DNA of 64,000 bases, from NCBI RefSeq assembly GCF_947568905.1, contig NC_079171.1, forward strand, positions 43,152,001-43,216,000. The letters run 5' to 3'. The position numbers and the translations under genes were made by a program. Below are positions 1,219 through 64,000 of this stretch, one piece after another (the first letter of the stretch is position 1; each line of letters starts with the position of its first letter). The notes beneath the pieces were generated by a model. That model had not been told where the DNA came from, made no database searches, and was given only the letters and a program-made list of their open reading frames with translations. This DNA is from Ostrea edulis. Its lineage: Eukaryota.

Positions 1219-4200
1219 ATGAGTAGAATTGGTAAGGTATAAGTTTTACATTACGACCCCTGGTTCGAGGCTTCTGATGGTGGACTGTTGGTCCCCGAGG
1301 GTCTCTACAGCTCAGTAGCTGAATGCTTCGTTACTAGCTTGAAAATACGGATGTATATCTAATTTCTGTGATAAAATTTAGAAATTCATTTCAAACTTAT
1401 CTTCTTCACACATAGCTCTGATCCTTAGACGAATTTGACTTCAGTTTTTGGCACTCTAATAATCTTTTTAGTTCTTACAAGTTTCTTGTTATTTCGGATT
1501 TCCTGTATTTCGGCTTGAGCATCACTGAAGAGACATTATTTGTCGAAATGCACATCTGGTGCATCAAAATTGCTACCGTATAAGTTTTACATGAGCATCA
1601 TATGCACGTGCATGCACCTGCACGTGAACAAAGTAAAGAAACAGCATGTTGTATATTTGGTAAATTTTGTCTTCACTGTATTTCATGCAACATGATCTTT
1701 TCTCCAATCAGATATCTATGTCTTTTCAATAATTTAAAAGTCAATATCATAAAATTCAATTAAAAGCAGTTTACAAAAAGTTACAGAAGAGGAGTTTTTC
1801 ATTTTATATTAATTCAGAGTAGAAACATGATTTCACTGCATTATATATACATTGTACTTGAACTACACAGTAAAGTATAGTAAATGAGATGTGCATCCAC
1901 TTGAGAGTCGGTACTATAAAAACGACAGTGAAAATGATTGATGTACACTATACATCAGAGGCCACTACAGTTATGAGATTGATCACTTTTCGTTATCTTC
2001 ACCTTTTACTATTGGGAATTTAACATTCTGTGTGAAATATTGATACAAATACAAAAAACGTGTGTCAAATCACGAATGCTATTTTGTGTATATAACACAT
2101 GACCAAATATTTTTTTGCAGGGCAGTATTTGTCTATGAGATACGGTGGACAGGGAATGGTGTGAGGAGGAATAGAGTGAAAGTAAGAAGTGGGGGGGGGG
2201 ACAGAAAGAGGAAAAAATAACATATTGAATTGTTCATACGTCGATGAACAAAACAATTAAATTTACCTTAGAGAAGTTTTACTTTGAACGTCACCAGCTT
2301 TAGGTGAAGAACTACAAATATTGACCAATTCATCCACGACTCTCAAAAACGCAGCAGTAGGAAATTCTGATCGCTTCAACGCTTCCCGTGACACCAAGCC
2401 TGAAATCTTAAGGACATGCATGTAATCCAAAGACGCTTTCTTTTCTGTTCTACTGTCGGGCGCTTGGCTAAGGAACAGTTGCTACACATCCATGTTAAGC
2501 GTCCTTCGTCTGATAATGCGCCGTTGTCCAGAATGGAATGCAGTCCCTAACTAACATCTGGCCTGAAGGTTATAAACGTTTGAGTTCGTTTTTATCCTCA
2601 AACCCGAATTCCGTGCTTTAAATCGTACTCGTACTGAAACGTGGTTATAAAACTGATGAAATTATTCTCATACTGAATCCCAGTGCATGTTAATGATTGT
2701 TTGAGTATGCTCGGAGCTTGCTCTGAGTTGTATTGAAAACAAACATGGTTGAGTTTGAGCATGATTACGGTAAACATTTTATAACTTCTAGTCCAGGACT
2801 AACGTGACCGGCTTTTGTAATCATTTCGTGGCATCATTATTTACATTCGCAGTTGATCAACATATTTCGACGTACTTTTGGCGCTTGGGGTCGTATCATT
2901 CGTTCCAATGCCTACCGCGACAAGGGACTCTGGCTGTACCCTCTCATCTAAAAGACCCACAACTCTCACTTCTGACTTAGCAATGGAACAGTGTCACGTT
3001 CTAGGATTGACGCAGGTAAAGCACGAGCAGGATTCAAATTCACCACCTTCTCGTCACAAAAGAGAAAACTGTAAACAATGGGGTGGTAGCTTACATATTT
3101 CTTAACGTCCTGCTCGAGAATTCTTCACTCATATGGAGAAGTCTAAACATTAGACTATAGGAATACTCAAAAGAATTTCCTTAATACTTGAGATCGTTCA
3201 TAGCAACAATTGCTCTTCGGAAATTTATCAGTTATTTCAAAAGTTATCTTAATCATCACATACATCATATGTTTTTTAAAAACACACACGTGTTGTTTTG
3301 AGTAGGGTCGTCGTATATTAGACTGTATATATGTTTTAATATATCTCAGCTAAAATTATTGAGGAAATTATATCCGTCCTTGTACATCGGTATTTTACAT
3401 GAGACCAGATATATTTTTATCTACTCTATTAATAAATACTTATGGGGAAAAGATACAAATTTAATGAGATATGATTTCATAGATGCTTTATATCATCGCA
3501 AGATGGCCAGAGAACTGTGGACATTATATTCAGGTATGGACACATATTCAAAGTTATATCTTATGTTTTAAATATCACAGTGACCTTACAAACACGTTGC
3601 CATTGTTGTTTGCATTTTGTTGTTGCACTTTTGTTGTTTTGTCGTTGTTGTTGATGTTGTTTTGAACGTTAACCCTCTGAGCTAGCCGGTTACATAATAC
3701 GAATTCAAGGTACAAATATACATCACTGATATTTTTGTGGACATTTGAATTTCTGAAAATAAGTCAGCCATGATATATTTTACATGTAAGAGTACCGATT
3801 TTCCACTACAGTGAGAGTAAAATTGGTGCTTTCTTAGATTACTTTTCATTTTCAGTTGTTTTCATCATTTGTTCTGCTTTGATCATAAAATCAACCACGG
3901 CACAGTTTCCAAACTTCGACATCCAAGCTAACAACAGCCTGTTAACCGCTGGTGACACAGTGATCATCGACTGTTTGCTCTACAATGCCTCTGTGCTCGA
4001 TATCATGAATGGCTACGATATTGTATGGTTTAAAGATGAAATGAAACTCACACAAGCATACACGAGGCTGATGAATGACGTCATCAATGACCATCGATAC
4101 TCCGCCAGCATCGGAGTCAGAAATATAGGAGCTGTCTCTACCATTCAAATCACAGGTGAGGATATTACTTTTTATTGTAGAATCCAAAGCAGTACATGCA

Positions 4201-7200
4201 GTGATGATCAATACAGATATATTGTTCACGTGTTTGATGACGGAAGGAATGGTGCCAAGGAATACTATTTCTCTTCTGTATGTTTCATGCAAAATAATCG
4301 GTAAAGGTTACCTGCACGATTTATTTTCCTCTAAAGCCCATGTGCAATTTATAAAGTTTGTTAAGTATGAAACATATTTGGGATGCTGGACAAAATGCAA
4401 ACATTACATATTTTTCATTGAAACGTTAGAATTCACAGGGAAACGTTAGGGAACTGGTGGTTTGTACATCTTATGTGTCGTGGAAACACTTACCAGACTT
4501 TGAATTGTATCGCAAGTGGAGGATTAGGGATACTTTCCCACAAAGATACACATTTCTTTTTACTCCTTTAAATCTATGATTCCATCGCATTTTGAGTAGA
4601 CAGACGTTTTCACATTGACGCATGAAACACAGAAAGGATGTAAATTGAAATTTAAGTGGCTGTGTCTGTAATATATTTCTCTGTTACATTTATCGCCTCC
4701 TCCCCTTTCGATAACCTTCATGGCGAAGTTAAAAAGGTTTCAGATATGTGGTAATTGAAAATGATCTATATATCAATTTCTTAACTATATCAAAGTACTT
4801 AACTAAAATGTTTCAGATCTGAAAATAATATTACATGAATCTTTTATTGAAATATGTGTCTGTTGATTTATTTAACTGTACACGTAAGTATGGTATGTCA
4901 ATTTCAGTGTTCTACCCTGTGTAAGTAATGACCACTTTCATACCCGTAACGTTGAATTAACTTACTCTATTAAATGCTGGGGGACATTAATTGACAAGAT
5001 TGGAAATATACAGCGTTTTACTGTTATCTTTTGCAGTATAAACACTTGACATCACAAATGAAAAGGGTAGGTATGATTGAGCACGGGCGACCGTGGAAAT
5101 ATTGGATTGGAGTTGTAGTTTTTGAAGTCAGTTTGAATTCTCTTTGCATTTACATGTTTCGGAGGTATCAGGTGAATATCTTCTGAAATGCATTGGTGTC
5201 CATCAGATACTTGTAAATTTTAAGACATATATTTGAAAATTATAATTCTCAAAGAGAAATGATTGTATGCCACGCCACAAAAATGATTTAAAAAACATGT
5301 TAGGTCTTTGGAGATATCATTTAAAAGACCACGGCTTTAACTGGCAATATAGAGAAATACTGCGTTCATGACTGTCAAAACATTTGACGTCACAATGAAA
5401 AGGGCGGGTACGATTGAGCGAGGACGACCGTGAAACATTGGATTGAAAACGGTAGTATTTTATTTCAATCTAATGTCTTCACAGTCGTCCGCGCTGAATC
5501 CTACCTTTGTGATGCCTTGTATTTAGTCTGTAAAATATAACAGCTACAAAACGTTAGATCTTGCCAATTAATGTTCCGCGGTTTTATATACATGTACTTA
5601 TATGAAGAAGGCGTCCAACGTTGCCGAATAAGTGCCTGCTCTTTATTTATTCTTCAAAGTGCAATAAAATCAATTCAAATAAATTAGAATTTCATCATTC
5701 ACGATTCTACACCTGGTATTATGTTTTACACCGCCGCAAATACCCATGTCATTATACACGTAGAACGCTTTAATGATTATTCATATCAGTCACCACCTCG
5801 TATAGATATTCGATGAGTATTAATACAGAAAGACTTCCTGATTAAGATGTTTTTGCATCCCCTTATTCAAAATGGAGGAACGATTGACCTAAATATTTTT
5901 TTAAAGAAAAGTACATGCGATGATTTCTCGGAACAGCGTCACATGAATTCAAGACACTGTGACACACCATGTTTATCTAAAAATAGAAGGGGCGCTATAT
6001 ATTTTTTTAAAACTCAGAGTCCATTAAAAAACACCCAAAACAGATATAGAAATATCACCCAAATTCTTATTTAGACACATTTCATTCATACGCATTATTA
6101 CAATAGGTTTTAGAAGAAAATCATTATTTTGGTGGTGTTTTTTGTAATGGGAAATTCAGATAATGATATACAAACAACTTTCCTGTACTTGATGAAGTAG
6201 ATCAAGGTCCCCACAAACGGATGCTGTTGTGGTATAAATAATGCTTTGTATTGACGATTGTTACACAGAAGACGAGGAAATCATTTAGAATATACATTCC
6301 TTCTTTGGAATATCTGCAGTTCAGCGTATTTTAATTCGCAACAATTCAATCTTTGTTTTATTTTTCAATTCTTGCTTAAGATAGGCCCATCCTTTTGAAA
6401 CAAATGTCAATCAAACAGTTTGTTTTTATTTAGATAGAGTAAATAACCCCTGAGTTGAAAAAAATACTCATATTTGTCATACCTTATCACGCTTATTTTC
6501 TTATAGTACTAAAGTTGGTCTTAGAACACATATACCCCATCATCAAACATCAGAACTTTCAAACGTGATCTCATTATTTATTAAGTTATGTGCTTATTCA
6601 CATTATATTAGATTATGATATTATAAAACCAACATATATTCACTTGTTATGAACATATTTCAAACATTACAAAGGACGATATAAATATTTCGATGATTAA
6701 GCTATAGTCTTCCAAAAAGATCACATGATGTCATTGTTTGGACATTTTCCAAAAACCATCCCTGTAGCTTTTTCTTTTGACACCTCTAGTGTGTCCAGGG
6801 ATCCGTGTTTGCCCAACTATCTATATTGTATTGCTTATAGGAGGCATGGGATTGATCACTGTTCGTTATCTTCACCTTTCACATACAATAGTTTTCTTGA
6901 TATATAACTTTTGAACAACAGGTATCACTACAGAAGATGAAGGCGTTTTTACTTGTGAACTTACAAACAGAATGAACGTTAAACAGAGGAAGTCGATATA
7001 TATAAGTGGTACAGTATCTAAAACAATCAATATCTTTGGGTAATTTTCTAACTAGCGAAAATAAATAATGATAAAGCGGTATGATATTTTTATTTAAAAA
7101 AGCATATCTATGAACGAATTGGGGGAAATAATCAAGCATCCACTTTCATCTTTGTAGTTGAAAATCAAGAAAATCAAACCATAACACCTGATGTCATCAC

Positions 7201-10200
7201 CGTTATTTCTGATCCATCATTCAACCATAACAAAAGGTATGAATGCTAACATCGAACCAACTACCCACACTCCCATGCAACCTTTTAAAAACACATCACT
7301 GTAAGCAATTAGATAAAAATAGGTTTAGCACTGTTGTATGTACAAAAGGAACCAAAATTAAACCTCTGTTTCTATAAAGTTTACGTATCTATCAATCAGT
7401 AAAACTGTTTAAGAAACACTTGCATGCATGTCCCTGTGTAGCAATTTTGAAAAGGATCAACTTTAAATTTAGATAATTTGTAAAGGTAGTGAAATGTGGA
7501 TTATCTATTAGTAAGAAGTGACAACCACAATGCTAAGTCTTATCTTCTCAGCAGATGTTTCCAAATATCAAATGATTTTAGTCATTATCTTGCACTATTA
7601 TGACTTTAAAACCAATGGGTGTCATCTAATTTTTAGGATATATTAGTGTATCAACTTTGATTATTGTGAAGCAGAGGTTTCTTCACCTATCGGGCGGATA
7701 TGTCTTCCTATGTCCAGTTTAGGTTGTCCTTGACATTGTGATCCCGTGACCTCAAAATCAAATTGATGTTTTCAACTTCTTAAAGCTGTATGGTCCGAAT
7801 TACAATATTTTTTTCCATCTCGTAAAAACGCTATTAAATCATCGCACGTATGTAGTTATGAGACTGTACGACATATCATAAATTATTTCACCTGTTTTAA
7901 CCCAAATAATTTGATTTTAAATCGATGTTTACAAATAACCGCGTCACTCTGCCATTTCAAGTGAGTCACGTGACCAGTTCAAACTTTCAGATCATTGCTG
8001 GTTTTATCTGTGTTAAGCTGTGTATTTTGTTATAACAGTGCCGCACCATAAGTTTAATAGAAATAAAAATATCAAATACCTCTTAGTAATTCGTTGTTTT
8101 ACGCCCCTTCAGCCTTAAAACTAGTTGCGTATGAGTTAATACATCATGTTGGGATTCCCCTGACGCGCGTGGGTCTATTTATAGACGTCTATTATGGGAT
8201 GATTTATATATGTAGCCACTATATTTACTTTCTAAATAATAATCTCACTGTTTTCTTTTACATGCAGATGTTTTCAAGCATGTAATTAAGGGAAAGTTAA
8301 TAACTTTATAAAGTAATTAATGTGCTTTAAAGTAATTATGTACAAAAATAAGACATGAACATCGGGTCATACAGCTTTAAGTTAAAGTAGTATCAAGTAT
8401 GGTACTGTCAAGAAAAGGACTCAATCCAAATATATATGTAATTTTGATTACGGATTACTCCATTTACCTGACCAAGATAGTGTAGGTGTAGAAGAGTAAT
8501 GAAATTGAAACATATTCATTAATAATGTCTGATGTGTTTCATTCAAATTGCATATCAGGTAGTTCTTGATATACTGGATTTGGCTTCCTGATCAAGATGA
8601 AAACGCTCAAAGTGAACTGCACTTGATCCCACTTTTGGTATACCTAGGGGTCCGTAATTGACCTACCTATAATTTTGTACTATTTACCGGAGATATCACT
8701 GTTCGTTTTCTTCATTTATTGTTATTCTCAAGATATTATGAAAGCAGTAATATTATGTTCCTATGTCCAGTTTGACCCTTGACTGTTGGTCCCGTGAATT
8801 TAAAATCAATAGAGTAAGTGTACCATATTGTCTATATTCTTAATATATTGAGGAAGCAATATCTTACTATGAGAAGTTTGACCCTTGATCTTTGACTTTG
8901 TGATCTCAAGGTTTATGAAGTACAAGTACTTATGTAGATCCAGAGTACTCGCTTCCTGTATGTGGAAGAAATGGTTCTCAAACTATTGAGCAGACAACAT
9001 CTTACCATGTCCAGTTTAACCCTTAATTTTTGTACGCTTGATCCCAAATCCAATAGGAGATATCATTTTATGAAAATCCGTGTACATGTATATTGTACCA
9101 TGTTTCATGTCTGCAAAGCAAACTGTTTTCAAGATACTGATCGGATAATATCTTACCATGTCTACAGTACACCGTCGGTTGTGCATTAAATTATCAATTG
9201 ATCACTTAGTCTATCAATTAATTACTGACTGTATGTGTATATATAATCTGAATTTAGATTGTTCGCAGAGCGGACGGATGTTGAAGAAGACAAAAACTCC
9301 ACAAACACGACATCAATCAATATTTTTACCAAAAGGACGACCGATAGTGTCAAATTTCGTGCAGATGTACACTACATTAGTTATCCACCAGACAGCAACA
9401 TTTCAACTACAGCAGACGGCAACAGTACTTCACCGCTGTTGCTTTCTATTGAAAACACTTTAGAAAACACGTCCATGTCAACAGGTAATTCTAGAAAACA
9501 AATTTGAATTAGGAATCTCCATAAAAAAGTTATTGGAGTTCTTTTAAAGTGAATTATAGAATCAAACATTTCTTAGTATTCCGAATATGTAATGTCACAA
9601 ATATACAATGCGAATATTCTGATAAATCTAGAAAATTACTTCTAGTCAGTTCAGCTCTTAAGAACCAAATTAATCTCAATTAAATGTCTTTGACTGAAGG
9701 CAATTAGGTATAGTGGAATTAGTTCAGTGAATTATAAAGAGATGAAATGGGGTTGGGGGTTAGAGTTTATATATCATAGCATCTTATGATGTATCCCCAT
9801 TTTGATTAGATAGGACCTTGTAGTCGCCTACACTAACACGAGAACTTCATATGCGTATTCTGGTTTCCTTTAACATCATTTACTCCTCAGTGCCAATATC
9901 CGACTCGACGGAAAGCTCTTATATAAAATGTAAAATAGATAAAGTGTCAACATTTTTAGAATCTTAGAAAAATAGAAAGATTTCTATATTCTGAACCGAA
10001 TGTGAAATCGACACATATTCATGTGGTCGAGTTAGGTCTGTCCATTTCCCATCAAGGAGCAAGGACTTGCTTTATAATTCATTTTCATGAAAATAACAGT
10101 TATAGTGGACAAGAGGCAATATAGAGTCAATTAATGTATATACAGAGACAGGCACAGGATAAAAATGTTGATTACAACTTACAATGGAAATCAGTTTTCA

Positions 10201-13200
10201 AATTTCATATAGAAGGAAGTATTAAAATTTCAACTTAAAATAAGTTATTCTATACATACAATTCACTATAGATACTATATTTCGGTGCTGTAGCTTCATG
10301 AATCAATTTTTATGTCGTAGGAATACAGAAAAGAGAAGACGACAAAGGTGGTCTCACTGCAGGAATCATCGTGCTTGTGCTTATCCTTGTTCTGATGTCA
10401 ATATACTATGCCAGAAGAAGAAACACCTTAAATTGTGAAAGGTGAGTTTATAACGACTGTAAGATGTATATGAAGTGATATTTTGATACCTAGCGTTAAA
10501 AAGGAAAATTACACAACTTGCCTTTTCATACTTTGCATTAACACAACTGGATTTCAGACCATAGTGGAGATTCCGTGACACTGTGATCATGAGTACCTTT
10601 ATTAATTGATGGAGTCACTTGCGCACTTCATTCCCTTAAATATGACTGAATTATACAAGAATACGATTTCCCTTTTTTGAGTGAGAATATTTTCAAGTGT
10701 TACAAACAAACACGATTTTTCATGGTAATGACATCATGGATACGGGGGTTCGTATTTGCATGAAATAATAGTGGTCTTCTACTTCTCGGAGCATTAGCAA
10801 ACATAAGCACATCATCAGAACACTGTTCTTGTCACATGTACATCAAGGTTTTGCTGTGTATCGATTATTCCTTTTACTTCCATCATTTTATCATCCATTT
10901 GGCCGCTTTTCACAGATTAATACATGCTTTTATCAGTGCACGCTCTTCCGTTCGGATGTCTGACTTTGCCAAGATCAATACCTTTGTCTTATTTTATTGA
11001 TATTTACTTTATTCATTAAATAACAGATATATCTACATCAGAAAATTACAGCAGATGTTTTGTTATCTCTCAAATTTGATTTGAATCTGTTCAATGGAAA
11101 ACATCCATTTACCTACTAAGGTTTTATCGTTATCCATGAACACGCACCCTCCTTTCATAACCCATGCAAGGGATAGAAATTAGAGAGTTGGGCAAATGTG
11201 GGTCATTGGATATACCAGAAGTGGGACCAGGTAGTAATATCCTGTCAACCGATCACACCAGCCGTGAGCTCTATATCTTCATCAGGTAAGCAGAGTAATA
11301 CACAGGACTCATAGCAGGTGTGATCGGTTGACAGGGGGTGGTTACTAATCCAAGGCGCCTGATCCCACCTCTGTCGTGTCCATGGAACCATGTTTTTACA
11401 ACTCTTTGATTTTCCTTCCTTGTGAGATTTATGAGACTGTTCGTTATCTTCGTCTTTCATGGATTCGGGTGTATTGTGATGCATATTCAAAGGTTCGTAT
11501 GGAGTGATGTAGCTTTAGTAGGTTTATTTCTTTATAAGGAGTTCATATTGTCTCAATATGATCAGTAATTTCTTATATATATATATAGGTTTTCTAGCTC
11601 GTAAATATAATCATGTCCGTTAAAAAGTTTATTTTTCATTTACATCTATAAAAGGGGGAAGGTAAACAACATACAAAAACAGTCTGATGGTGAATGTAAT
11701 TTTGAAATGAGTAATGTTCATGCAAAACATTGTCGTTTTTGTTACGATTCAGTCTTTCGAAAGGAAAAATAAGTCTACGATTTATATTGCACATCATATA
11801 TATTTTCAAAAGAAAGATCCCGTGGGGATCAGGGTTAGAATAGGTCATCAGTACCTCTTGGTTGTCATAAGAGTCGACTAAATGGGGCGATCCTTCGGAT
11901 GAGACCGCAGAAACCGAAGTATCGTGTCACAGCAGGTGTGGCACGATAAAGATTCCTCCTTGCTCAAAGGCCGTGAGCGCCGAGCATAGGCCTAAGTTTT
12001 GCTACCCTTCACTGGCAATGGTGGTGTCTCCATATGAGTGAAATATTCTCGAGAGGAAAGTTAAACAACATACAATCAATCAAAAGAAAATGTTTCTACT
12101 ATTTCTTTTTATCATGACATACAGGTACATTCATTTAATTAACAATTGATTTGAATCGCGTTTGCAGTGTTGCAACATAATGCTATTAACATTTCCTTAT
12201 CTGTAAGAGCATTATAGAATAAATGAAAAGTAGATATTTTAAAAAGTGCTAAAGGTCATGGGAAACGTATTTTTATAAACGAGTGTAATGATTCCTATCT
12301 AATTTTATTCAGTTTTATCTTCATTGAATCTCGATCAAGGTAGAAATCATAACTATTATTCTTATATAATTTACAATGCAACACAACATCATGCATAACT
12401 AAATCATGTTTTCGGTATAATATAGATCCATGTTGAATTTATCTATTTTTAATATCTAAATAAAGTAGTGCTATCCACATCATCTCTATTCATTGACATT
12501 ACCTTTTCTATATGTATGTCACTAATTACAGACTGAATGTTTTGAAATGAACTTGTGATAAATGAAACTTAGAATGTTAACATTCTGAGGTTGTCAATCT
12601 ACTTCATGGTTGAATTGCTTGATTTTGGAAAGTAAAACTACACTTACGACAGATTTGTATTTATTGGGTTAATGTTATTGTTTCTAGTTGCTGCCATGAA
12701 GCAAGATCTACAGGCAGAACTGATGACGTCACACCAAGAGAAACTATTCATCAATATGAAAGCGTTTTGCCGATAGTTTATCATGACGTTTACGTGGATC
12801 AGGCATCAGAGATTGAAACCAAACCCAGGAGGCGACCGGACGAAGATGCAATCGACAGAACCTTTCTAAATGAGTACGAGATCAACGAAAATTTACATAG
12901 GGAGAGTTCCGACGGTAGAATTGGTAGGGCCAACACGTTGGAAAAAGTAGAACCGTTGGCTATGTATCCTAACACCAGTGATCAAAATATGTTGAATATG
13001 CATCGTGAAGACACTTCCGATGATTATCTGGATCCGGTACCAGATTTTGAAATCAAACATTACGAAGATGTAAACGACAGGACCTTTCTAAATGAGCACA
13101 AGATCAAGAAACATATTCGTGGGAAGAGTTCCGACGGTGGAAATGATAGGACCGACACGCTGGGAAAAATAGAACTGCCGCATGTGTATCGTAACACCAG

Positions 13201-13330
13201 CGATCAAAATTTGTTCCCTGATTCTCATAATACCGGTGAAGACACTTCCGATGCAACGTATCGATTGAAAAAGAAAACCAGTCCCTACGAGTCATGCAAC
13301 AGTATCAGTTTCCTGAAGGATTTTGCATGA
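1219..13330 (+). CDS. Single V-type Ig domain / mucin-like stalk / TM / Tyr-motif tail receptor, copy 1 (489 aa)
   Basis: Exons are 1219-1231 (ATGAGTAGAATTG|gtaagg), 3856-4155, 6922-7008, 7158-7236, 9258-9484, 10321-10441 and 12688-13330. All junctions are GT-AG, phases 1,1,1,2,1,2, total 1470 nt open. Signal peptide MSRIVVFIICSALIIKSTTA; Ig hallmarks VIIDC..WFKD..RYS..TIQITGITTEDEGVFTC with 71 aa between the Cys; TM GLTAGIIVLVLILVLMSIYYA followed by RRR. Exon 1 is inferred from its conservation in copy 3. Confidence 0.88.
1237..1592 (+). mobile_element. Full monomer (~341 nt) of the hammerhead repeat, sense orientation, starting at intron 1 position +6
   Basis: 15-nt terminal redundancy GTATAAGTTTTACAT at 1237-1251 and 1578-1592. 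It is collinear with the reverse complement of 16498-16860. Confidence 0.85.
1519..1562 (+). ncRNA. Minimal type I hammerhead ribozyme with loop III GCAC (palindrome broken)
   Basis: gcatca-CUGAAGA-gaca(uuauu)uguc-GAAA-u(GCAC)a-UC|uggugc; predicted cleavage after 1556. Confidence 0.8.
2880..3065 (-). mobile_element. Old degenerate tRNA-derived SINE (paralogous copy at ~57898-58085)
   Basis: The - strand has a B-box-like head (gtgacgagaaggtggtgaatttgaatcctgc) followed by a body resembling the SINE at 11816. Confidence 0.45.
4971..5586. mobile_element. Internally deleted (non-coding) form of the Crypton unit; paralogous form at ~59845-60110
   Basis: Carries the same two left end-motifs (4971 and ~5330) and the inverted right end (cttgccaattaatgttccgcgg, ~5560-5586) as 22286-25080, but with only tens of bp where copy 2 has the recombinase gene. 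Confidence 0.6.
6781..6881 (+). mobile_element. Penelope-like element 3' end, ~40 bp upstream of the exon 3 acceptor
   Basis: Matches the 3' tail of the family (gtccagggatccgtgtttgcccaact...gttcgttatcttcacctttca); longer versions sit at the same intronic site in copies 2 and 3. Confidence 0.7.
7784..8376. mobile_element. Non-autonomous TIR DNA transposon with TTAA TSD (Kolobok-like)
   Basis: TTAA|AGCTGTATGGTCCGA...TCGGGTCATACAGCT|TTAA. The empty site cttcTTAAgttaaa is at ~33833 in copy 2. RR termini with a TTAA TSD fit Kolobok rather than piggyBac. Confidence 0.8.
11185..11460. repeat. Inverted pair of Penelope-like 3' fragments in intron 6 (paralogous pair at ~46865-47162)
   Basis: A - orientation fragment (~11185-11300) is directly followed by a + orientation fragment (~11305-11460) of the same family. 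Confidence 0.6.
11816..12079 (+). mobile_element. 5'-truncated bivalve-type SINE with (CAAT)n tail
   Basis: 10-bp TSD TCAAAAGAAA at 11806-11815 and 12080-12089. Body ...ggtgtggcacgataaagattcctccttgctcaaaggcc...; tail gttaaacaacatacaatcaat. It is absent in copy 2 (~48553). Confidence 0.8.
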
Positions 13331-26448: not shown

Positions 26449-26503
<55 letters not shown>

Positions 26504-27687: not shown

Positions 27688-27741
<54 letters not shown>

Positions 27742-28877: not shown

Positions 28878-28947
<70 letters not shown>

Positions 28948-54510: not shown

Positions 54511-54600
54511 GATTGAATTACTAGATCGATTTCGGTAATACGTGATGAGATTGAATCACTAGATCGATTGCGGTAATACGCGATCAGGGTGGATCATTAG
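54511..54600. repeat. 38-bp tandem repeat, ~2.3 copies
   Basis: gattgaattactagatcgatttcggtaatacgtgatga / gattgaatcactagatcgattgcggtaatacgcgatca. Confidence 0.7.
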
Positions 54601-55419: not shown

Positions 55420-56110
55420 TTAACTTGTGCAACTTTTCAGTAGACAAGTACTTAGTTACTTAGTATCATTAAGATATAGTGAGTTCAGGCGTCGCTTTTT
55501 TAAGTTGAGGGGTGGGGTGAAAATGGAGAAATAGTTGCCGTTTTATTTGTAGGAAAGAATCGTAATTAGCAAGAAAACAATTCTGACAAACCCCTAAAAT
55601 CGTAAGGGGGTGGGATCCTTCAGTACAGTTCAATTCGTCAGTTCAACCTTGCATTTCCAATACCCTTCATCACCATTTAATGGCCAGCTAATAAATCAAT
55701 ATTTTCATATACTAATAACAAACTTTACATGTCATAACAACGCAATAAACGTACAAGTACGTCACATATCAAGAAAACAGGAGGGGCAGAAGTGTATGAG
55801 GGGTAGAGGGTGAGGCTACATGATGCTGCCAGTACGTGTCTGGAGATCGATGGATATATAGTGATTATTTATATCATATAAATGATTTTCAAAATCAGGC
55901 AGATATTTTTGTATCATAAATGAGTCGTCTTTAGCCATCACTACTTTGTATGTACAAGAATTGCCTAAATGACACATAATTTTCATAACTTCTTTTTCTG
56001 AAGAGTTCCAAAAAATTCTAATTCCAATATCCCCTATTGATAGGCCTTTTAAAGCATATCTTTGTTATTGGTTTGACGATTCTACCTAATTAGAGAGTAT
56101 ATATATTTAC

Positions 56111-59100
56111 ATGAGTAAAATTGGTAAGGTATTACAATTCGACCCCTTGGGCGAGGCCTCTGATGGTGGACTGTTGGTCCACGAGGGTCTCTTACTTATT
56201 TATCCTCTTCGTCCCCGGTGGGACATAAGGCTTCAACAAGTTGTCTCCATCTACCTCTGTCCTTGGCAATATACTGTGCCTGTCCCCATGAGTAGCCCAT
56301 TTCCTCTAGTTCTGATGTTACGGTTCTCCTCCAGGTGGTACGTGATCTGCCTCTTTTCGTCTTTCCAGGTGGTGTCCAGTGTAGAGCTACTTTGGGAATC
56401 CTGTTCTGGGGCATTCTCATTACGTGACCAAGCCATCTCATTCTTCTTTGTTTAATCTCTGCGCTGATGTTCTTGCTTTTGCACTTTTGGTGTAAGTTTT
56501 TATTACTGATTTTGTTTGGCCAAAAGATTCTGTTCATTTTTTAAGACAGCTGTTGTGGAAGGCCTCATTTTTTTTATATCACTGTCTATAACACGCCAGC
56601 ATTCAGACCCATACAGGAGGACTGATTTCACATTGCTGTAATAAAGTTGGACTTTGATCCTCAGACTGTAGCTGTTTGATTTCCAGATAGTTTGGAGTTG
56701 GGCGAATGCTGCACGTGCTTTGTTGAGGGTCTCTACAGCTCAGTAACTAAATATTTCGTTACTAGCTTGAAAATACGGATGTATATTTAATTTCTGTGAT
56801 AAAATTTAGAAATTCATTTCAAACTTATCTCCCTCATACATAGCTCTGATCCTTAGACGAATTTGACTCCAGTCTTTGGCACTCTGTTTTTCTTTTAGTT
56901 CTTACTATACAAACGACACAGTGAAAATGATTGATGTACATTATACATCAGAGGCCACTACATCTATGAGATTGATCACTGTTCGTTATCTTCAACTTTC
57001 ACCATTGGGAATTCAACATTCCGTGTGAAATATTGATACAAATACAAGAACACGTGTCAAACCACGGATGTTATTGTGTGTAAATAACATATGAAGGAGG
57101 GGGGGGGGGGCAAAATTTACCAAATAGTATTTTTGCATGCCAGTATTTGTCTATGAGGTACGGTGGACAGGGAATAAGGTGAGGAGGGATGGAGTGAAAG
57201 TAAGAAGGGTGGGGGACAGAAAGAGGGAGAAATAACATTGAATTGTTCATACGTCGATGAAGAAAACAATTAATATTGCCTTAGATAAGTTTTACTTTGA
57301 ACGTCACCAGCTTTAGGTGAAGTACTACAAATATTGACCAATTCATCCACGACTCTCAAACACGCAGCAGTAGGAAATTCTGATCGCATCAACGCTTCCC
57401 GTGACACCAAGCCTGAAATCCTAAGGACATGTATGTAATCCAAAGACGCCTTCTTTTCAGTTCTACTGTCGGGTGCTTGGCTAAGGAACAGTTGCTACAC
57501 ACCCATGTTAAGCGCCCTGCGTCTGATAATGCGCCGCTGTCCAGAATGGAATGCGGTCCCTAACTAACATCTGGCCTGAAGGTTATAAAACTTTTGAGTT
57601 CGTTTTCATCTTCAAACTAGAATTCCGTGCTTTAAATCGTACTCGTACTGAAACGTCAAGGTGATAAAACTGATGAAATTGTTCTCATACTGAATCCGAG
57701 TGCATGTTGATGATTTTTTGAGTATGCTCGGAGGTTGCTCTGAGTTGTATTGAAAACAAACATGGCTGAGTTTGATCATGAGTACGGTAAAAGTTTAAAA
57801 ACTTCTAGACCAGGACTAACGTGACCGGCCTTGTCAATCATTTCGCGGCACCATTATTTACATTTGCAGTTGATTGACATATTTTAACGTACTCTTTGCG
57901 CTTGGGGTTGTATCATTCGTTCCAATGCCTACCGTGACAAGGGACTCTGGCTGTACCCTCTCATCTAAAAGACTCACAACCCTCACTTCTGACTTAGCAA
58001 TGGAACAGTGTCACGCTCTAGGATTGACGCAGGTAAATCACGAGCAGGATTCAAATTCACGACCTTCTCGTCACAAAAGGGAAAACTGTAAACATTGGGT
58101 TGGTAGCTTACTTATTTTTTAACGTCCTGCTCGAGAATTTTTCACTCCTATGGAAAAATCTAAACATTAGACTATCGGAATACTCGAATGACTTCTAAGA
58201 ATCTCTTTAATACTTAAGATCGTTTTAGCAACAATTGCCCCTCGGAAATTTATCAGGTATCTCAAAAGTTCTCTTAATCATCACATGCATCATATTGTTT
58301 TAACAACACACACTTGTTGTTGGGAGTGGGGTAATCGGATATTAGACTGTATATATGTTTTAATGTTTCTCAGCTAAACCTATTGAGGAAATTATATCCG
58401 TCTGCGTACATTGGTATTTTCCATGAAATCAGATATATTTTTATCTACTCTATTAATAAATACTTCTGGGGAAAAGATACAAATTTAGTGATATATGATT
58501 TCATAGATGCTTTATATCATCGCAAGATGGCCAGAGAACTGTGGACATTATATTCAGGTATGGACAAATGTTCAAAGTTATATCTTATGTTTTAAATACC
58601 ACGGTGACCTCACAAACATGTTGATATTGTTGTTTGCATTTTGTTGTCCCACTTTTGTTGTTTTGTCGTTGTTGTTGATGATGTTTTGAATGTTAACCCG
58701 CTGAGCTAGTCGGTTACACGATACGATTTTTTTTTACATTTAAATTTCTAAAAAGAAGTCAGCCATGATATTTATTACATGTAACAATATCGATTTTCCA
58801 CTACAGTGAGAGTAAAATTAATGCTTTCCTAAATTACTTTTCATTTTCAGTTATTTTCATCATTTGTTCAGCTTTGATCATAAAATCAACCACGGCACAG
58901 TTTCCGAACTTCGACATCCAAGCCAACGACAGCCTGTTAACCGCCGGTGACACAGTGATCATCGATTGTTTGCTCTATAATGCCTCCGTGGTCGATATCC
59001 TGAATGACTACGATATCGCGTGGTTTAAAGATGAAATCAAACTCACACAAGCATACACGAGGCTGAGGAATGACGTCATCAACGACCAACGATACTCCAT

Positions 59101-62100
59101 CAGCATAAGAGTCATATTGAACATAGCAACGGTCTCTACCATGCAAATCACAGGTGAAGATATTTCTTTATTGTAGAATATAAAGCAATGCATGCAGTAA
59201 TGATCAATGTACATAGATTATTTTCTTGTTTGATGACGTAAGCAATAATATTATGCCAACGGCACAATTTGGCCAAAATGAGTCGCCATAGAAATCTTAT
59301 ACTATTTGTCTTCTGTTTATTCCATGTAAAATTATCTGTAAAGGTCACCTGTACAATCTCCTTGCTTCTAAAGAACTCGTCCAATTTCATAAAATTTGGT
59401 TAAGTATGAAACAAATTTGGCATGCTGAACAGCATGCAAACATTCTATATTTTTCATTGAAACGTTAGAATTCAAGGGGAAACATTAGGGAACTGGTGAT
59501 TGGTTTGTACATCTTAAGTGTCGTGGAAACACCTACCAGACTTTGAATTGTATCGCAAGTGGAGTACTTGGGATACTTTCTCACAAAGATACATATTTCC
59601 TTTTACTCCTTTAAATCTATGATTCCAACTCAGTTTTTGAAGTGAATTTGAATTTGAATTCTCTTTGCATTTACATGTTTCGGAGGTATCAGGTGAATAT
59701 CTTCTGAAATGCATTGATGATCATCAGATACTTGTAAATCTTAAGACATATATTTGAATACTATAATCCCCAAAAAGAAATGATTGTATGCCACGCAACA
59801 AAAATTATTTTTAAAATGTGTCAGGTCTTTTGGAAATATCAATTAAAAGACCACGGCTTTAACTGGCAATGTTGAAGAAATACTGCGTTTGTGACTGTCA
59901 AAGCATTTAACGTCACAACGAAAAGGGCGGGTACGATTGAGCGAGGACGATCGTGGAACATTGGATTGAAAATGGTAGTATTTTATTTCAACCCAATGTC
60001 TTCACAGTCGTCCGCGCTGAATCCTACCTTTGTTATGTCAAGTATTTAGTCTGTAAAATATAACAGCTACAAAACGTTAGATCTTGCCAATTAATGTTTC
60101 GCGGTCTTATATACATGTACTTATATGAAGAAGGCGTCATACGTTACGGAATAAGTTCCTTATCTTAACTTATTCTTCAAAGTGCAATAAAATCAATTAA
60201 AATAAATTAGAAATCCATCATTCACAATTCTACACTTGGTATTAGGTTTTATTCCGCCGCAAATATCCATGTCATTATGCACGTAGAATGCTTTAATGAC
60301 TACGCACATCAGTAACCGCCTCATATACATATTTAATGCATATTGATTCAGAAAGTCTTCCTGATTAAGATACTTTTACACCCCCTTATTCAAATTGGAG
60401 GAACAACTGACCTAAATATTCTTTTAAAGAAAACAAAAACATGGATGGTTTTTCGTAACAACGTCAGATCAATTCAAGACACTGGAATACACCATGTTTA
60501 TCTAAAAATAGGAGGGTGTTAGATATTTTGTAATTCAGAGTCCACTCGCATACACTAGAAACACATATAGAAAGATCATCCACATTCTTATTTAGACACA
60601 TTTAATTCATACACATTGTTACAAAAGGTTTTAGAAGGAAATCATTATTTTGGAATTTTTTTTTTGTAATGGGAAAATCAGATAATGATATACAACTTCC
60701 CTGTACTTGATAAAATTGCTTAAGGTCACCACAAACGGATGACGGTGTGGTATGAATGATGCTTTGTGTTGATGATCGTTAGACAGACGACAAGGAAATC
60801 GTTCAGAATATATATTACTTCATTGGAGTGTCCGCAATTCAGCGTATTTCAATTCGCGACAACTCAATTTGTTTTCTTTTGTTTTTGAATTATTGCTTAA
60901 GATAAGTCCATCCTTTTAAAACAATTGTCAATCAAACAGTTTGTTTTCATTTAGATAGAGTAAATAACTCTTGAGTTAAAAAAATCTCATATGTGTCATA
61001 CCTTATCACGCTTATTTTCCTATAGTACTATAATATGTCTTAGAGAACACATACCATAAAATCAAACATCAAAACTTTCACTCCAAAAATTATCTCATAA
61101 GTTATTAAGTTATGTGCTTATTCACATCATATTAGATTATAATATAATAAAAACAACATATATTCAATTGTTATAGACATATTTGAAACATTACAAAGAA
61201 AAACATAAATAATTCGATTATCAAGCTGAGGATAGCCTTCCGAATACATCACATGATGCCTTTGTTTGCACATTTTCCAAAAAAAGACATTATTGCACCT
61301 TTTTCTTTTGAGGATTGTTTAGAATAATACCCTAAGTTAACAAAGGAGCAAATTTTATCATAAATGTCCACATATATTTTGTATATTAGGGTGTACCCCC
61401 ATATATGTGATGTCAGGTTTTGTAAGTTATTCCCTGTAAACATTGAGAATATACAAAGTGCATACGTCACGATGAAGAGGATTAGATGGAAAATAAAATA
61501 TGTGACTGAACTTTGTTCCGAAAAGGGACAAGGAGTCCCACTATCACCATTTTAGAAATATATTGAGGTTATTGTGGCTTGCAATCTTCTGTCTGACTAC
61601 TTAACCTAATAAACAAGTACATCGCAACACATGATGCGACCTATTTTTTTTTAAATTGTATACACTCCGCTTACCTGATAAGGATATAGGGCTCACGGCG
61701 AGTGTGACCAGTCGACAGGGGATGCTAACTCCTCCTAGGCACCTAATCCCACCTTTGGTGTGTCCAGGGGTCCGTGTTTGCGCATGTCTCTATTTTGTAT
61801 TGCTTATAGGAGTTATGGGATTGATCACTGTTATCTTCACCGATCATAAAATATTTGTGACACAAACTGCAACTTTGGTCCCAACAGGGGATGGGGTGCC
61901 TACCCTCCATTCCTATCGAACCTTTGAATGTTTTATCCTTGCCATCACTGACCCAACTACTAAAACGTAACATAGTGCCACACATGATGTAACCTATTTC
62001 TATGAAATTGTTCACAATGGTACCCAGCTAGCCTGATTAGCGTTACTCATGTATACCCCATAATACTTTCTATTTTCTATCATTAAATCATAGTTAACGA

Positions 62101-62861
62101 AACTAAACCTGTATCATATTCTTTTCACATTTAATTGATGTTCAAAAATGAATTCATTCATTGACGGTACAGGGATTTTAAGAGTTTCGATTGAAGTCAG
62201 CATTTCACAAATGCTATGGTTAGTTCATCAATACAAGCTATCATTGGGTCAAATGCTGTCTGCCGTGTTTCATACCGATTTGTAGGCCATTGTTGACACA
62301 CTGATTTTGACTACGGATAACTCCGTTTACCTGATCAGGATATAGAGCTCACGGCTGGTGTTACCCGTCGACAACGAATGCTTACTGCTTCTAGGCACCT
62401 GATCCCACCTCTGGTGTGTCCAGGGTCCGTGTTTGCCCAACTATCTATATTGTATTGCTTATAGGAGGTATGAGATTGATCACTGTTAGTTATCTTCACC
62501 TTTCACATACATTAATTTTCTTGATATATAACTTTTGAACAACAGGTATCACTACAGAAGATGAAGGCGTTTTCACTTGTGAACTTACTAACAGAATGAA
62601 CTTTAAACAGAGGGAATCAATATCTATAAGTGGTACAGTATTTTAAAAAAATCAATATCTTTGGGTAATTTTCTAACTAACGAAAATCAATAATGATAAA
62701 GCGGTATGATATTTCTATTTAAAAAATCACATATATGAATGATTTGGGGGAAAGAATCAAGCATCCACTTTTATTTTTGTAGTTGAAGATCTAGAACACC
62801 AAACCATAGCAACTGATATTAAAACCGTTCTTTCTGATCCATCATTGAACTATAACAAAAG
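56111..62861 (+). CDS. Ig-mucin-TM receptor copy 3, exons 1-4 (continues beyond the window)
   Basis: Exons are 56111-56123 (ATGAGTAAAATTG|gtaagg), 58851-59153, 62546-62632 and 62783-62861. All are GT-AG and in frame: MSKIVIFIICSALIIKSTTAQF...C...WFKD...GITTEDEGVFTC. Confidence 0.85.
56128..56905 (+). mobile_element. Remnant of the intron 1 hammerhead repeat, interrupted by an RTE and lacking the ribozyme
   Basis: Collinear with ~1240-1475 on both sides of the RTE, then jumps to the equivalent of ~1915. Confidence 0.75.
56193..56724 (-). mobile_element. 5'-truncated RTE/RTE-X LINE
   Basis: 10-bp TSD GAGGGTCTCT at 56183-56192 and 56725-56734. ORF2 C-terminus RRMRWLGHVMRM...KVALHWTPPGKTKRGRSRTTWRRTV...AKDRGRWRQLVEALC, with a TAAATAAGTA tail. 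Confidence 0.9.
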
Positions 62862-62925
62862 GTATGAATGCTAACATCGAATCAACCACCCAGACTGCCA
62901 TGCAGCCTTATAAAACACTTCACTG

Positions 62926-64000
62926 TACCAACCATACCCAGTCTGACACCCAAGCAGTCCCAGAAAACAGTACTGGGGACTACTCTCGCAAAAGGTGCTC
63001 TAGGACTATCTTGGGACTGCTGTGAGACTGCCCTGGGACTGCTTTAGAAAGCAGTCCCAGCAGTCTCAGCTGTCCCATCAGTCCCGGGACTAATTCCTGG
63101 GACTGCTTTGTTCAGGCAAGCGTAAATGAATCACGTTATGTTGAGATTGACAAGAAAGCCCACCCACCCACCCACCCTGTATTCAGAATATACACAAATG
63201 ACTTCAGTAGGTTTTTCCCGCTTACTGACGCACTTTCAATAGAGAACTTGAGAAAATAGTGGATGGAAATAGAATAACAAGAACATCTTCCTACATTCGG
63301 CGGCGCATACTTTTTTAAGGAAGCAGATTTTACATGAAAGTGAATAATTTACTCCTTCTTCTTTTCCCACTAAATCATGTGTACTTCAGTGATATTTCCA
63401 TGTAAAAATAAACAAACAAACACATTTATCTGTCAGCGCCGGCTTTGGTCTTTGTGACATCTTCCGTGTTGGATTTCCTAACCCAGAATGAGAAATCACT
63501 CTTTTCGGATTAAATTAGAATCTGCTTTATTAATTTTAATTGGTCAATTACATTCGAAAAATGAAACCCATTGAACCATTTATTAGATAGACGAGTTTAT
63601 AGATGATTCGTGAGGGGAGAAGTGTTGTGGGGTCGGAAGCTTTGATCTGAAGGGGGAAGCTACTCAGGTAAACTGTATCCATGGAGACGGGAGACACGGG
63701 ATGCCGCTGTGTGTTTACATGTGTCAAAACAGGGCGATCATGAGTAGCAAAAGAGTAATTATTGTTAAATATCGTCGGTAACGCTCTGAACACGTCTATT
63801 CGGGAACAAGCACCTTACAAACACTTTACCTTCGATTTCAGGTTAAAACAACATGTGCATATACACTTTGATTGGAATCTTCATAATTATTTAAATCTGT
63901 CTAAATGTTGGAGTGAAATTAAACAATTTTACAATGCTGGCAATAAGTAGTCCAAATCTAGCCAATCATTTACAAATCAAAAATACACACACACATAAGT
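62926..64000. mobile_element. Orthologous copy of the CTG-TSD TIR element (runs off the window)
   Basis: Same insertion point (cttcaCTG|taccaaccatacccag) and same body as 31805-33348. Confidence 0.8.

What the first reader, a model, noticed from the sequence alone, without database searches (positions are those of the whole stretch)
1219..64000. Tandem array of single-V-Ig / mucin stalk / TM / Tyr-rich-tail receptors in an invertebrate-type genome
Seen: three paralogues that splice by hand into signal peptide, one Ig domain (71 aa between the Cys, V-set size), an S/T/N-glycosylation-rich stalk, a TM helix and a ~215-aa tail with many Tyr. The Ig domain is split between exons at the E/F strands, so the six-frame ORFs miss it. 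Known: the same architecture occurs in vertebrate TIM and CD300/TREM-type immune receptors, which also sit in clusters. Inference: this is a diversifying immune or recognition receptor cluster, probably convergent in architecture. I do not recognise a named gene.
Basis: partly seen in the sequence, partly recalled or inferred. Interest (0 to 1): 0.82.

Follow-up and report, generated by a model that had tools for sequence, protein, structure and literature searches.

The report
Oyster single-Ig membrane glycoprotein gene cluster
The window holds three neighbouring copies of a flat-oyster (Ostrea edulis) gene for a cell-surface protein with one immunoglobulin domain, a sugar-rich stalk, a membrane anchor and a long tyrosine-bearing tail; the genes are real and already annotated as 'uncharacterized', but the head is conserved rather than diversifying and an immune role is untested.

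Summary
The window is Ostrea edulis chromosome OX387711.1, about 43.152-43.216 Mb. It carries three tandem plus-strand paralogues that RefSeq lists as uncharacterized proteins: LOC125661745 (copy A), LOC130049081 (B) and LOC125661736 (C). Each has seven GT-AG coding exons encoding a signal peptide, one Ig domain split after the E strand, an N-glycan-rich stalk, a TM helix and a 224-233 aa acidic tail with 10-12 Tyr.

Corrections:
- The first coding exon is at 3503-3533 (MARELWTLYS), identical in all three copies, not at 1219. Copy B is therefore not headless.
- A short extra stalk exon (7158-7236) is needed to keep frame.
- A fourth, divergent paralogue lies just upstream of the window.

Interpretation is only partly supported. 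The Ig head is under purifying selection (dN/dS 0.16-0.28). The stalk (2, 8 or 5 eight-residue sequon repeats) and tail evolve near-neutrally (0.7-1.3). No ITAM exists, and an ITIM occurs only in copy A. It is not a TIM or CD300 member, because the Ig domain has only two Cys.

No RNA data were available and both structure predictions failed. This is a lineage-restricted IgSF receptor-like family of unknown ligand. Moderate-to-low interest.

The parts
3503..3533 (+). Copy A (LOC125661745) coding exon 1: ATG plus MARELWTLYS, the start of the signal peptide, with a phase-1 GT donor
   Evidence: tblastn of P0002/P0005/P0006. Identical in all three copies, inside a block 95-97% identical against 83-89% just upstream and 85-91% in introns. 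P0002 itself starts at an upstream ATG (3464) that is GTG in B and C.
3856..4155 (+). Copy A exon 2: end of the signal peptide plus Ig strands A-E (first Cys, Trp, RYSASI)
   Evidence: Splice sites and translation. Matches P0002 22-124.
6922..7008 (+). Copy A exon 3: Ig strands F-G (DEGVFTC motif, second Cys), phase 1 to phase 1
   Evidence: Three-copy alignment 94% identical. Translation. P0002 123-152.
7158..7236 (+). Copy A exon 4: membrane-distal stalk segment, phase 1 to phase 2. My first hand model missed it.
   Evidence: Present in P0002. GT-AG sites in A, B and C.
9258..9484 (+). Copy A exon 5: Ser/Thr/Asn/Pro-rich stalk with two 8-aa sequon repeat units
10321..10441 (+). Copy A exon 6: transmembrane helix and basic stop-transfer (ARRRN)
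   Evidence: Hydropathy scan. Alignment and splice sites.
12688..13330 (+). Copy A exon 7: cytoplasmic tail (213 codons plus stop) with an internal duplication of about 81 aa. An AATAAA lies at 13423.
   Evidence: 100% match to P0002 295-508.
19087..19117 (+). Copy B (LOC130049081) coding exon 1
19446..19748 (+). Copy B exon 2 (Ig strands A-E)
31422..31508 (+). Copy B exon 3 (Ig strands F-G)
31662..31740 (+). Copy B exon 4 (stalk)
44428..44804 (+). Copy B exon 5 (stalk). Contains a 24-nt (8-aa) repeat x 8.2 at 44553-44748.
45962..46094 (+). Copy B exon 6 (TM)
49145..49808 (+). Copy B exon 7 (tail). An AATAAA lies at 49901.
58527..58557 (+). Copy C (LOC125661736) coding exon 1
58851..59153 (+). 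Copy C exon 2 (Ig strands A-E)
62546..62632 (+). Copy C exon 3 (Ig strands F-G)
62783..62861 (+). Copy C exon 4 (stalk). Exons 5-7 lie beyond the window end: L005 17188-17490, 18647-18775 and 21222-21887.
1219..1231 (+). Also in C at 56111-56123, absent in B. Not supported as the main first exon.
   Evidence: Not in any of the three RefSeq models.

Best explanation
Shown: three tandem, same-strand paralogous genes of Ostrea edulis, part of an array of at least four. Each encodes a type I single-pass membrane glycoprotein of 495-557 aa.

Modules, in order:
- a cleavable-looking signal peptide (MARE, then a 17-residue hydrophobic core, then KSTTA|Q);
- one V/I-type Ig domain with a single Cys pair, the C-strand Trp and a D-x-G-x-F-x-C F strand;
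- an extended stalk rich in Ser, Thr, Asn and Pro, whose 8-residue N-glycosylation repeat varies in number (2 units in A, 8 in B, 5 in C);
- one TM helix;
- an acidic tail that matches no Pfam family or solved structure.

The tail consists of a juxtamembrane segment, two copies of a unit of about 81 aa, and a conserved C-terminal box.

Inferred:
- The conserved Ig head binds one shared ligand at a stalk-set distance from the membrane.
- The tail signals or is sorted through phosphorylation of the few invariant Tyr (P-Y-E-D and S-P-Y-E-S/A-C).
- The paralogues differ in reach (stalk length) and output (tail motifs) rather than in what they recognise.
- Whether the ligand is self (adhesion) or microbial is unknown.
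For: Gene structure: all 7 exons have GT-AG sites and consistent phases in A and B, and the first 4 in C. They coincide with RefSeq proteins P0002, P0005 and P0006.

Ig domain: Pfam I-set, Ig_3, Ig_2, V-set and ig all match in 3 of 3 copies, with best E-values 1e-6 to 3e-4. I-set is above its gathering score. A PDB profile search returns almost only Ig domains (CEACAM1, Dscam, TCR V-alpha), with best E 1e-4.

Architecture numbers.

Selection: dN/dS is 0.16-0.28 for the Ig exons, 0.8-1.3 for the stalk and 0.7-1.0 for the tail.

Frame is kept despite divergence. All 5 exonic indels between A and B are multiples of three: 3, 150, 12, 9 and 12 nt.

Tail motifs are invariant across six sequences, including a 40%-identical paralogue and two metagenome fragments.

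Poly(A) signals sit 93 nt after the stop in both A and B.
Against: - No transcript evidence could be obtained. All five runs found are DNA, and no splice joints were seen.
- Both AlphaFold runs on the Ig domain failed (pLDDT 37.7 and 35.3). The fold therefore rests on sequence profiles only.
- Near-neutral dN/dS in the tail could mean relaxed constraint rather than functional tuning.
- No kinase, SH2 or other partner is known.
- Neither of the two invariant Tyr sits in a sequence that matches any of the nine motif patterns scanned.
Confidence: 0.6

Rival explanations
1. One reading: a diversifying immune or recognition receptor cluster. The paralogues would have evolved to recognise different ligands, as in expanded pathogen-recognition families.
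For: Tandem duplication with copy-specific differences. The TIM/CD300-like architecture. One ITIM-like motif (IVYHDV) in copy A. Oysters have known IgSF immune receptors with ITIM or ITAM tails (PMC11999971, PMC11841013).
Against: The Ig head is the most conserved part (dN/dS 0.16-0.28; 84-87% amino-acid identity). Its substitutions are not confined to any one loop. The ITIM is lost in B (K at -2) and in C (Tyr to Phe), and there is no ITAM. The array is small: 3 close copies plus 1 divergent one. There are no expression or challenge data.
Confidence: 0.2
2. A non-immune adhesion or mucin-like surface protein of epithelia, for example mantle or gill. The Ig head would mediate cell-cell or matrix contact. 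The stalk would be a glycan spacer and the tail an anchoring or sorting region.
For: The best solved-structure sequence matches are adhesion molecules: CEACAM1, Dscam, contactin and NCAM. The head is conserved while the mucin-like stalk varies in length. No conserved ITIM or ITAM exists.
Against: Those matches are generic Ig E-F-G strand motifs with E around 1e-4 to 1e-2. No tissue data exist. Invariant Tyr-containing boxes in the tail suggest regulated signalling or sorting.
Confidence: 0.25
3. One or more copies, especially B, are decaying duplicates. The intact-looking frames would simply reflect the youth of the duplication.
For: Near-neutral dN/dS in stalk and tail. Copy B carries 11.7-kb and 12.7-kb introns that hold, in the first, a Crypton-like ORF and two Tc1/mariner copies, and in the second, tandem arrays. 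No RNA evidence exists.
Against: All seven exons of B are open with canonical splice sites. B keeps the conserved start-codon block and a poly(A) signal. All exonic indels are in frame. The Ig exons of the B-C pair have the lowest dN/dS, 0.16. RefSeq models B as protein-coding.
Confidence: 0.12
4. True homologues of the vertebrate TIM or CD300/TREM families.
For: Only the order of modules: IgV-like domain, mucin-like stalk, TM helix, Tyr-bearing tail.
Against: The Ig domain has 2 Cys, whereas TIM IgV has 6 and CD300/TREM IgV has 4 (established knowledge). No TIM, CD300 or TREM chain appears among the 60 best of 89 PDB profile matches. The tail profile finds nothing outside this family among 1.84 billion representatives.
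Confidence: 0.02

Closest known systems
Vertebrate TIM family (HAVCR1/TIM-1, TIM-3, TIM-4)
   Same: Type I membrane protein with one N-terminal V-type Ig domain, a glycosylated mucin-like stalk of variable length, one TM helix and a Tyr-containing tail. The genes are clustered.
   Different: Here the Ig has only the canonical Cys pair, not six Cys. The stalk is dominated by N-x-S/T sequon repeats rather than classic O-glycan PTS repeats. The tail is four to five times longer and unrelated. No sequence relationship was detected.
CD300 / TREM / pIgR-like single-IgV receptors
   Same: A single Ig head, a short gene cluster, and paralogues that share a similar head but differ in the tail. One copy has an ITIM-like motif, and another has a polar His in the TM helix.
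   Different: There is no second disulfide. No short-tailed activating partner with a Lys/Arg/Asp TM residue exists. The ITIM is not conserved. No sequence similarity was detected.
Oyster IgSF signalling receptors (CgIgIT, CgIgIT2, CgIgR, NCAM1-like) described in Crassostrea gigas
   Same: Bivalve type I IgSF membrane proteins whose tails carry Tyr motifs (PMC11999971, PMC11841013).
   Different: Those proteins have 3-5 Ig domains, with or without FN3, and defined ITIM or ITAM motifs. This family has one Ig, a repeat stalk and a tail with no conserved ITIM or ITAM. No Crassostrea protein matched the tail profile.
CEACAM1 / Dscam Ig domains (best solved-structure sequence matches)
   Same: The E-F-G strand sequence pattern (L-x-I-x-x-x-x-x-E-D-x-G-x-[YF]-x-C ... 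S-I-x-[IL]) aligns at E 1e-4.
   Different: The matches are partial and generic to the Ig superfamily. The domain number, stalk and tail are unrelated.

Membership tests
Immunoglobulin superfamily domain (Pfam clan Ig: I-set PF07679, V-set PF07686) | Profile match at the curated threshold | tested here: met
   I-set scores 27.4 bits against a cut-off of 23.7 on P0002:40-156, and matches in 3 of 3 copies with best E 9.8e-7. V-set scores 22.2 bits, below its cut-off of 26, for copy A; scores for B and C were not listed (best E 5.4e-6), though it aligns end to end without net insertion.
Immunoglobulin superfamily domain (Pfam clan Ig: I-set PF07679, V-set PF07686) | Conserved B-strand and F-strand Cys pair, C-strand Trp and the D-x-G-x-Y-x-C F-strand motif | tested here: met
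   Cys50 and Cys122/123, with 71-72 residues between them. Trp lies in (V/A)WFKD. The F strand reads EDEGVFTC, with Phe in place of Tyr. RYS(A/I)SI is a D-strand-like motif.
Immunoglobulin superfamily domain (Pfam clan Ig: I-set PF07679, V-set PF07686) | Beta-sandwich fold; V-type (C', C'' strands) versus I-type | tested here: inconclusive
   AlphaFold2 gave pLDDT 37.7 with the 3-sequence alignment and 35.3 with a single sequence. No fold search was run on such models. The Cys spacing and the 22 residues between Trp and the D-strand Arg lie between typical I-set and V-set values.
TIM family | IgV with six conserved Cys (three disulfides) forming the CC'-FG ligand cleft | tested here: not met
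   There are only two Cys in the Ig domain of all three copies. The six-Cys criterion comes from established knowledge of TIM structures.
TIM family | Mucin-like stalk, TM helix and a Tyr-containing tail | tested here: met
   The stalk is 112-162 aa and 40-48% S+T+N+P. There is one TM helix, and the tail has 10-12 Tyr. This is architectural only.
CD300/TREM-type receptors | IgV with an extra disulfide; paired inhibitory (ITIM) and activating (charged TM residue, short tail) members | tested here: not met
   Two Cys only. All copies have long homologous tails. An ITIM occurs only in A. Copy C has a His in the TM helix, but no short-tailed member exists.
ITIM/ITAM immunoreceptors (functional class) | Conserved [SIVL]xYxx[IVL], or YxxL/I-x6-12-YxxL/I, in the tail | tested here: not met
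   A regex scan found one ITIM in A (IVYHDV) that is not kept in B or C. It found none at homologous positions in the relatives, and no ITAM in any sequence.
The family itself (Ig-stalk-TM plus 'PYED / SPYESC' tail) | Homologous tail with the invariant boxes P-Y-E-D-x-x-D-x-x-F-x-x-E, E-L-x5-N and K-K-x-x-S-P-Y-E-x-C-x3-F-x-K | tested here: met
   Found in A, B and C, in the upstream paralogue (P0001 / L006:2954-3454) and in two metagenome fragments (P0003/L003, P0004).

The most novel reading that the evidence does not exclude
The array is a 'same head, different reach and output' receptor set. A conserved Ig head would bind one ligand. The paralogues would have been tuned by stalk-repeat number (2, 8 or 5 glycan-bearing units) and by gain or loss of tail Tyr motifs: an ITIM-like motif only in A, Y-E-N in B and C, and a TM His only in C. 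They would share a new, Ostrea-lineage cytoplasmic signalling module built on invariant P-Y-E-D and S-P-Y-E-S/A-C boxes. That would be an invertebrate analogue of paired or graded immunoreceptors, arisen independently of the vertebrate ones.
Probability: 0.15. Interest if true: 0.6.

Novelty: new member of a known kind. Interest (0 to 1): 0.3.

Why it matters
Bivalves rely on expanded, lineage-specific surface receptors, and Ostrea edulis is a species of conservation and disease concern. This cluster adds a small family that is absent from annotated Crassostrea proteomes at the level of its tail. The tail module matches no Pfam family or solved structure, and no paper cites the three gene ids.

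The practical value of this check:
- corrected gene models (first exon, extra stalk exon);
- evidence that copy B is intact;
- discovery of a fourth paralogue just upstream;
- evidence that selection preserves the Ig head while the stalk and tail drift.

This last point redirects any functional work from 'diverse recognition' towards 'one ligand, varied presentation or signalling'.

In itself this is an ordinary kind of gene family for a mollusc genome.

Tried and rejected
- My first hand model joined the Ig F-G exon directly to an acceptor at 9268/9269. That acceptor is destroyed in copy B (CAG to CAA). The RefSeq proteins showed a 79-nt exon (7158-7236) and an upstream acceptor at 9257/9258 that is conserved in B. 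I rejected my model.
- Word-index protein searches with single exons gave almost nothing because of the length filter.
- I first took P0001 for an orthologue from another species. Its contigs are 99.1-99.5% identical to the O. edulis chromosome just upstream of the window, so it is a same-species paralogue.
- Two metagenome scans, one with the Ig profile and one with the tail profile, found no relatives.
- The RNA-run search found only DNA runs. Laying them showed repeats and allelic or paralogous differences, but no splice joints.
- Two AlphaFold2 runs failed, so no fold search was made.
- A PDB profile search with the tail gave one chance-level hit.
- Rfam at gathering thresholds gave no hit anywhere in the window.
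- Paper searches for the gene ids, sample ids and topic found no description of these genes.
- I looked for PTP catalytic motifs on the minus strand under the annotated antisense gene and found none in the 31.9 kb held.
Full report
WHAT THE WINDOW IS

The window is AT-rich eukaryotic DNA (32-38% G+C) with no N. A profile search with the tail exon recovered a 508-aa protein identical to the exons of the first copy. The cluster look-up names it XP_056002154.1, 'uncharacterized protein LOC125661745 [Ostrea edulis]'.

The encoding-contig look-ups place the window on chromosome record OX387711.1 of assembly GCA_947568905.1. It covers about 43,152,001-43,216,000.

THE OBSERVATION

Self-comparison shows a tandem segmental duplication with three units:
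- A, about 1.9-15.5 kb;
- B, about 18.8-50.6 kb;
- C, from 56.9 kb to beyond the window end.

I mapped the exons by hand from the DNA and from three-copy alignments.

My first model skipped one exon. It needed an acceptor at 9268/9269, which is mutated in copy B (CAG to CAA). The database proteins P0002 (A), P0005 (B, LOC130049081, 557 aa) and P0006 (C, LOC125661736, 535 aa) resolved this. A 79-nt exon (7158-7236 in A) shifts the phase, and the stalk exon starts at an upstream acceptor (9258 in A, 44428 in B) that is intact in both copies held in the window.

The final model has seven coding exons. All have GT-AG sites and compatible phases. They sum to 1488 nt in A and 1674 nt in B. Introns are 0.15-2.8 kb in A. 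In B, two introns have grown to 11.7 and 12.7 kb through insertions.

THE FIRST EXON

That site also exists in C (56111-56123) but not in B.

All three RefSeq models instead start in a 31-nt exon: 3503-3533 in A, 19087-19117 in B and 58527-58557 in C. It encodes MARELWTLYS and ends in a phase-1 donor.

This exon is identical in all copies. It lies in a block of about 130 nt that is 95-97% identical, against 83-89% just upstream and 85-91% in introns. The longer N-terminus of P0002 uses an ATG that is GTG in B and C.

Joined to exon 2, this exon gives a conventional signal peptide: MARE, a 17-residue hydrophobic core, then KSTTA|QF. The cleavage site is inferred, because no SignalP was available.

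Copy B therefore has a start codon and a conserved 5' block. It is not headless. Without RNA I cannot exclude 1219 as a minor alternative first exon in A and C.

THE PROTEIN

Numbering from MARELW:
- Cys50 and Cys122 (123 in B and C) bracket 71-72 residues.
- The stalk is 112, 162 and 138 aa in A, B and C. The ectodomain carries 8, 13 and 12 N-x-S/T sequons.
- There is one TM helix of 20-24 residues, followed by ARRRN.
- The tail is 224-233 aa, net acidic, with 10-12 Tyr.

Exon 2 ends after the E strand (…STIQIT). An 87-nt phase 1-1 exon encodes …EDEGVFTCELTN…KSIYIS, the F and G strands.

Pfam matches five Ig-clan families in all three copies. I-set is above its gathering score (27.4 against 23.7). 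V-set is below its score (22.2 against 26) but aligns end to end. A PDB profile search returns almost only Ig domains: CEACAM1, Dscam, TCR V-alpha, contactin and NCAM, with best E 1e-4.

The fold itself could not be confirmed. AlphaFold2 gave pLDDT 37.7 with the three-paralogue alignment and 35.3 with a single sequence, so I ran no fold search. 'V/I-type Ig' is therefore what the data support. 'V-set' remains a size-based guess.

STALK AND TAIL

In B the stalk exon holds a 24-nt (8-aa) unit repeated 8.2 times, organised as a 72-nt higher-order unit. By the protein alignment, A has two such units and C five. Each unit carries one sequon plus Thr/Ser/Pro.

The tail contains an internal duplication of about 81 aa. 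An alignment of six tails shows these invariant boxes:
- P-Y-E-D-x-x-D-x-x-F-x-x-E;
- E-L-x5-N;
- K-K-x-x-S-P-Y-E-x-C-x3-F-x-K.

The six tails are A, B and C, the upstream paralogue, and two fragments from one JGI metagenome.

A motif scan finds no ITAM anywhere. It finds an ITIM-type motif only in A (IVYHDV). The equivalent site is KVYHDV in B and IGFHDP in C.

The tail has no Pfam match and no solved relative.

SELECTION

Results are:

| Module | dN/dS across the three pairs |
|---|---|
| Ig exons | 0.16-0.28 |
| Stalk | 0.8-1.3 |
| Tail | 0.7-1.0 |
| TM exon | 0.5-1.5 (too few changes to judge) |

dS is about 0.14-0.26 for the Ig and tail exons, with stalk pairs down to 0.10.

All five exonic indels between A and B are multiples of three. 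Frame is therefore maintained while the sequence drifts. That is typical of glycosylated spacers and disordered tails with short functional motifs.

The recognition head is the conserved module.

DISTRIBUTION

- The tail profile was searched against 1.84 billion cluster representatives. It found only four: the O. edulis cluster, P0001, P0003 and P0004. No protein carrying an NCBI or UniRef record, and so none from an annotated Crassostrea proteome, matched apart from O. edulis.
- The word-index search with the Ig-stalk region found only the three O. edulis proteins. That search is insensitive, so absence of distant Ig relatives is not established.
- P0001 turned out to be the last exon of a fourth gene of the same array. 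Its Logan contigs are 99.1-99.5% identical to the chromosome 0.9-3.3 kb (about 1.5-4 kb) before the window start. The annotated gene there (579 aa, plus strand) ends at that ORF's stop. A TM-like exon lies 2.9 kb upstream of it.
- Its tail is only 30-42% identical to those of A, B and C. I could not retrieve its ectodomain.
- No further copy lies within 10 kb downstream of C.
- P0003 and P0004 come from one metagenome sample whose host is unknown. Their DNA is at most about 70% similar to the tail exon.

EXPRESSION

The run search returned five runs from two studies. All hold the intron-rich stretch at 42-81% of sampled words, so they are DNA.

Laying four of them on 3490-9489 showed near-identical contigs over introns and exons. 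Repeat elements reached depths in the hundreds of thousands to millions. No joints corresponded to the splice junctions. There is therefore no direct transcript evidence here, and the RefSeq models are predictions.

MECHANISM

Shown: the gene structures, the module order, the Ig-profile matches, the repeat variation, the conserved tail boxes and the selection pattern.

Inferred: surface localisation, heavy N- and O-glycosylation of the stalk, ligand binding by the Ig head, and signalling or sorting through the invariant Tyr boxes.

I consider a receptor-like surface glycoprotein with one shared ligand and paralogue-specific reach and output the most likely reading (about 0.6). Whether the role is immune or adhesive is open.

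COMPARISON WITH KNOWN FAMILIES

TIM and CD300/TREM share only the module order. Membership fails on the Cys pattern of the Ig domain: two Cys here, against six in TIM and four in CD300/TREM (the latter figures from established knowledge).

Described oyster IgSF receptors (CgIgIT, CgIgIT2, CgIgR, NCAM1-like; PMC11999971, PMC11841013) have several Ig domains and defined ITIM or ITAM motifs. They did not match the tail profile.

VERDICT

This is a real, already annotated but uncharacterized, lineage-restricted IgSF gene cluster. The architecture claim is confirmed. The 'diversifying immune receptor' claim is not supported for the Ig head and is untested for immune function.

The database proteins P0002, P0005 and P0006, which contain the same exons, were used by id instead.

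Noticed in passing
L006:1-3454 (chromosome just upstream of the window; the gene ends about 3.1 kb before window position 1): A fourth, divergent member of the array: an annotated 579-aa plus-strand gene. It has a TM-like exon at L006:2-130. Its last exon (L006:2954-3454) shares the tail boxes at 30-42% identity. P0001 and the Logan contigs L001/L002 are alleles of it. Its ectodomain was not retrievable.
   Followed up: partly
window 53397-64000, minus strand (L005:4871 to beyond 31890): The public annotation places a 1189-aa minus-strand gene across copy C. Its Pfam hits are F5/8 type C (discoidin) and protein-tyrosine-phosphatase domains, so copy C would sit antisense inside it. No PTP catalytic motif is encoded on the minus strand of the 31.9 kb held, so this part is presumably intron or UTR.
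   Followed up: partly
window 4156-4301 (+), start of intron 2 of copy A: Reading through the exon 2 donor in copy A stays open for 48 codons. It spells a second F-strand-like motif (EDITFYC…YRYIVHVF). The read-through ORF gets a weak Ig-type Pfam hit over residues 15-108 (E 0.036). The frame is broken in B and C. It may be a relic of a once-contiguous Ig exon, or it may be chance.
   Followed up: partly
window 6781-6881, and 13674-13789, 17311-17425, 30584-30698, 31267-31382, 44951-45066, 51439-51553, 61736-61841, 62392-62505: A repeat of about 100-115 nt has at least nine copies in both orientations in the window. It reached summed contig depths in the hundreds of thousands to millions in the DNA runs, so it is probably a very abundant MITE/SINE-like element. 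One copy ends 40 nt before the acceptor of the Ig F-G exon in all three paralogues.
   Followed up: partly
window 22800-28900 (intron 2 of copy B): Mobile-element cargo sits in this intron. A 324-aa minus-strand ORF (23546-24520) has weak DUF3504/QRICH1 hits and is Crypton-like. An intact-looking 344-aa Tc1/mariner transposase lies at 25201-26235 on the minus strand (DDE_3, HTH_Tnp_Tc3_2). A second Tc1-like copy is split into two ORFs (26701-27533, plus strand).
   Followed up: partly
window 37028-37459 and 41822-42750 (intron 4 of copy B): Two tandem-repeat arrays (units of roughly 140 and 110 nt) lie inside a roughly 10-kb insertion that copy A lacks. No long ORFs are present.
   Followed up: no
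Rfam at gathering thresholds finds no ribozyme or other RNA family anywhere in the window.
   Followed up: partly
window 56196-56537 (-): A 113-aa ORF has a LINE-type reverse-transcriptase C-terminal tail (…RWLGHV.RM…). It lies within a roughly 530-nt insertion upstream of copy C that copy A lacks.
   Followed up: no
Copy C TM exon (L005:18647-18775; P0006 residues 279-302): Copy C has a His in the middle of the TM helix (…VVVLVHFLVL…), where B has Leu. A has a 4-residue deletion there.
   Followed up: no
L003 and L004 (JGI metagenome sample 3300045951): Two different tail-exon homologues come from one metagenome. L003's ORF 668-1270 also keeps the juxtamembrane C-Y-H-R-A…H-G-Y-E-N-V segment. 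An unidentified host therefore carries at least two members of the family.
   Followed up: partly
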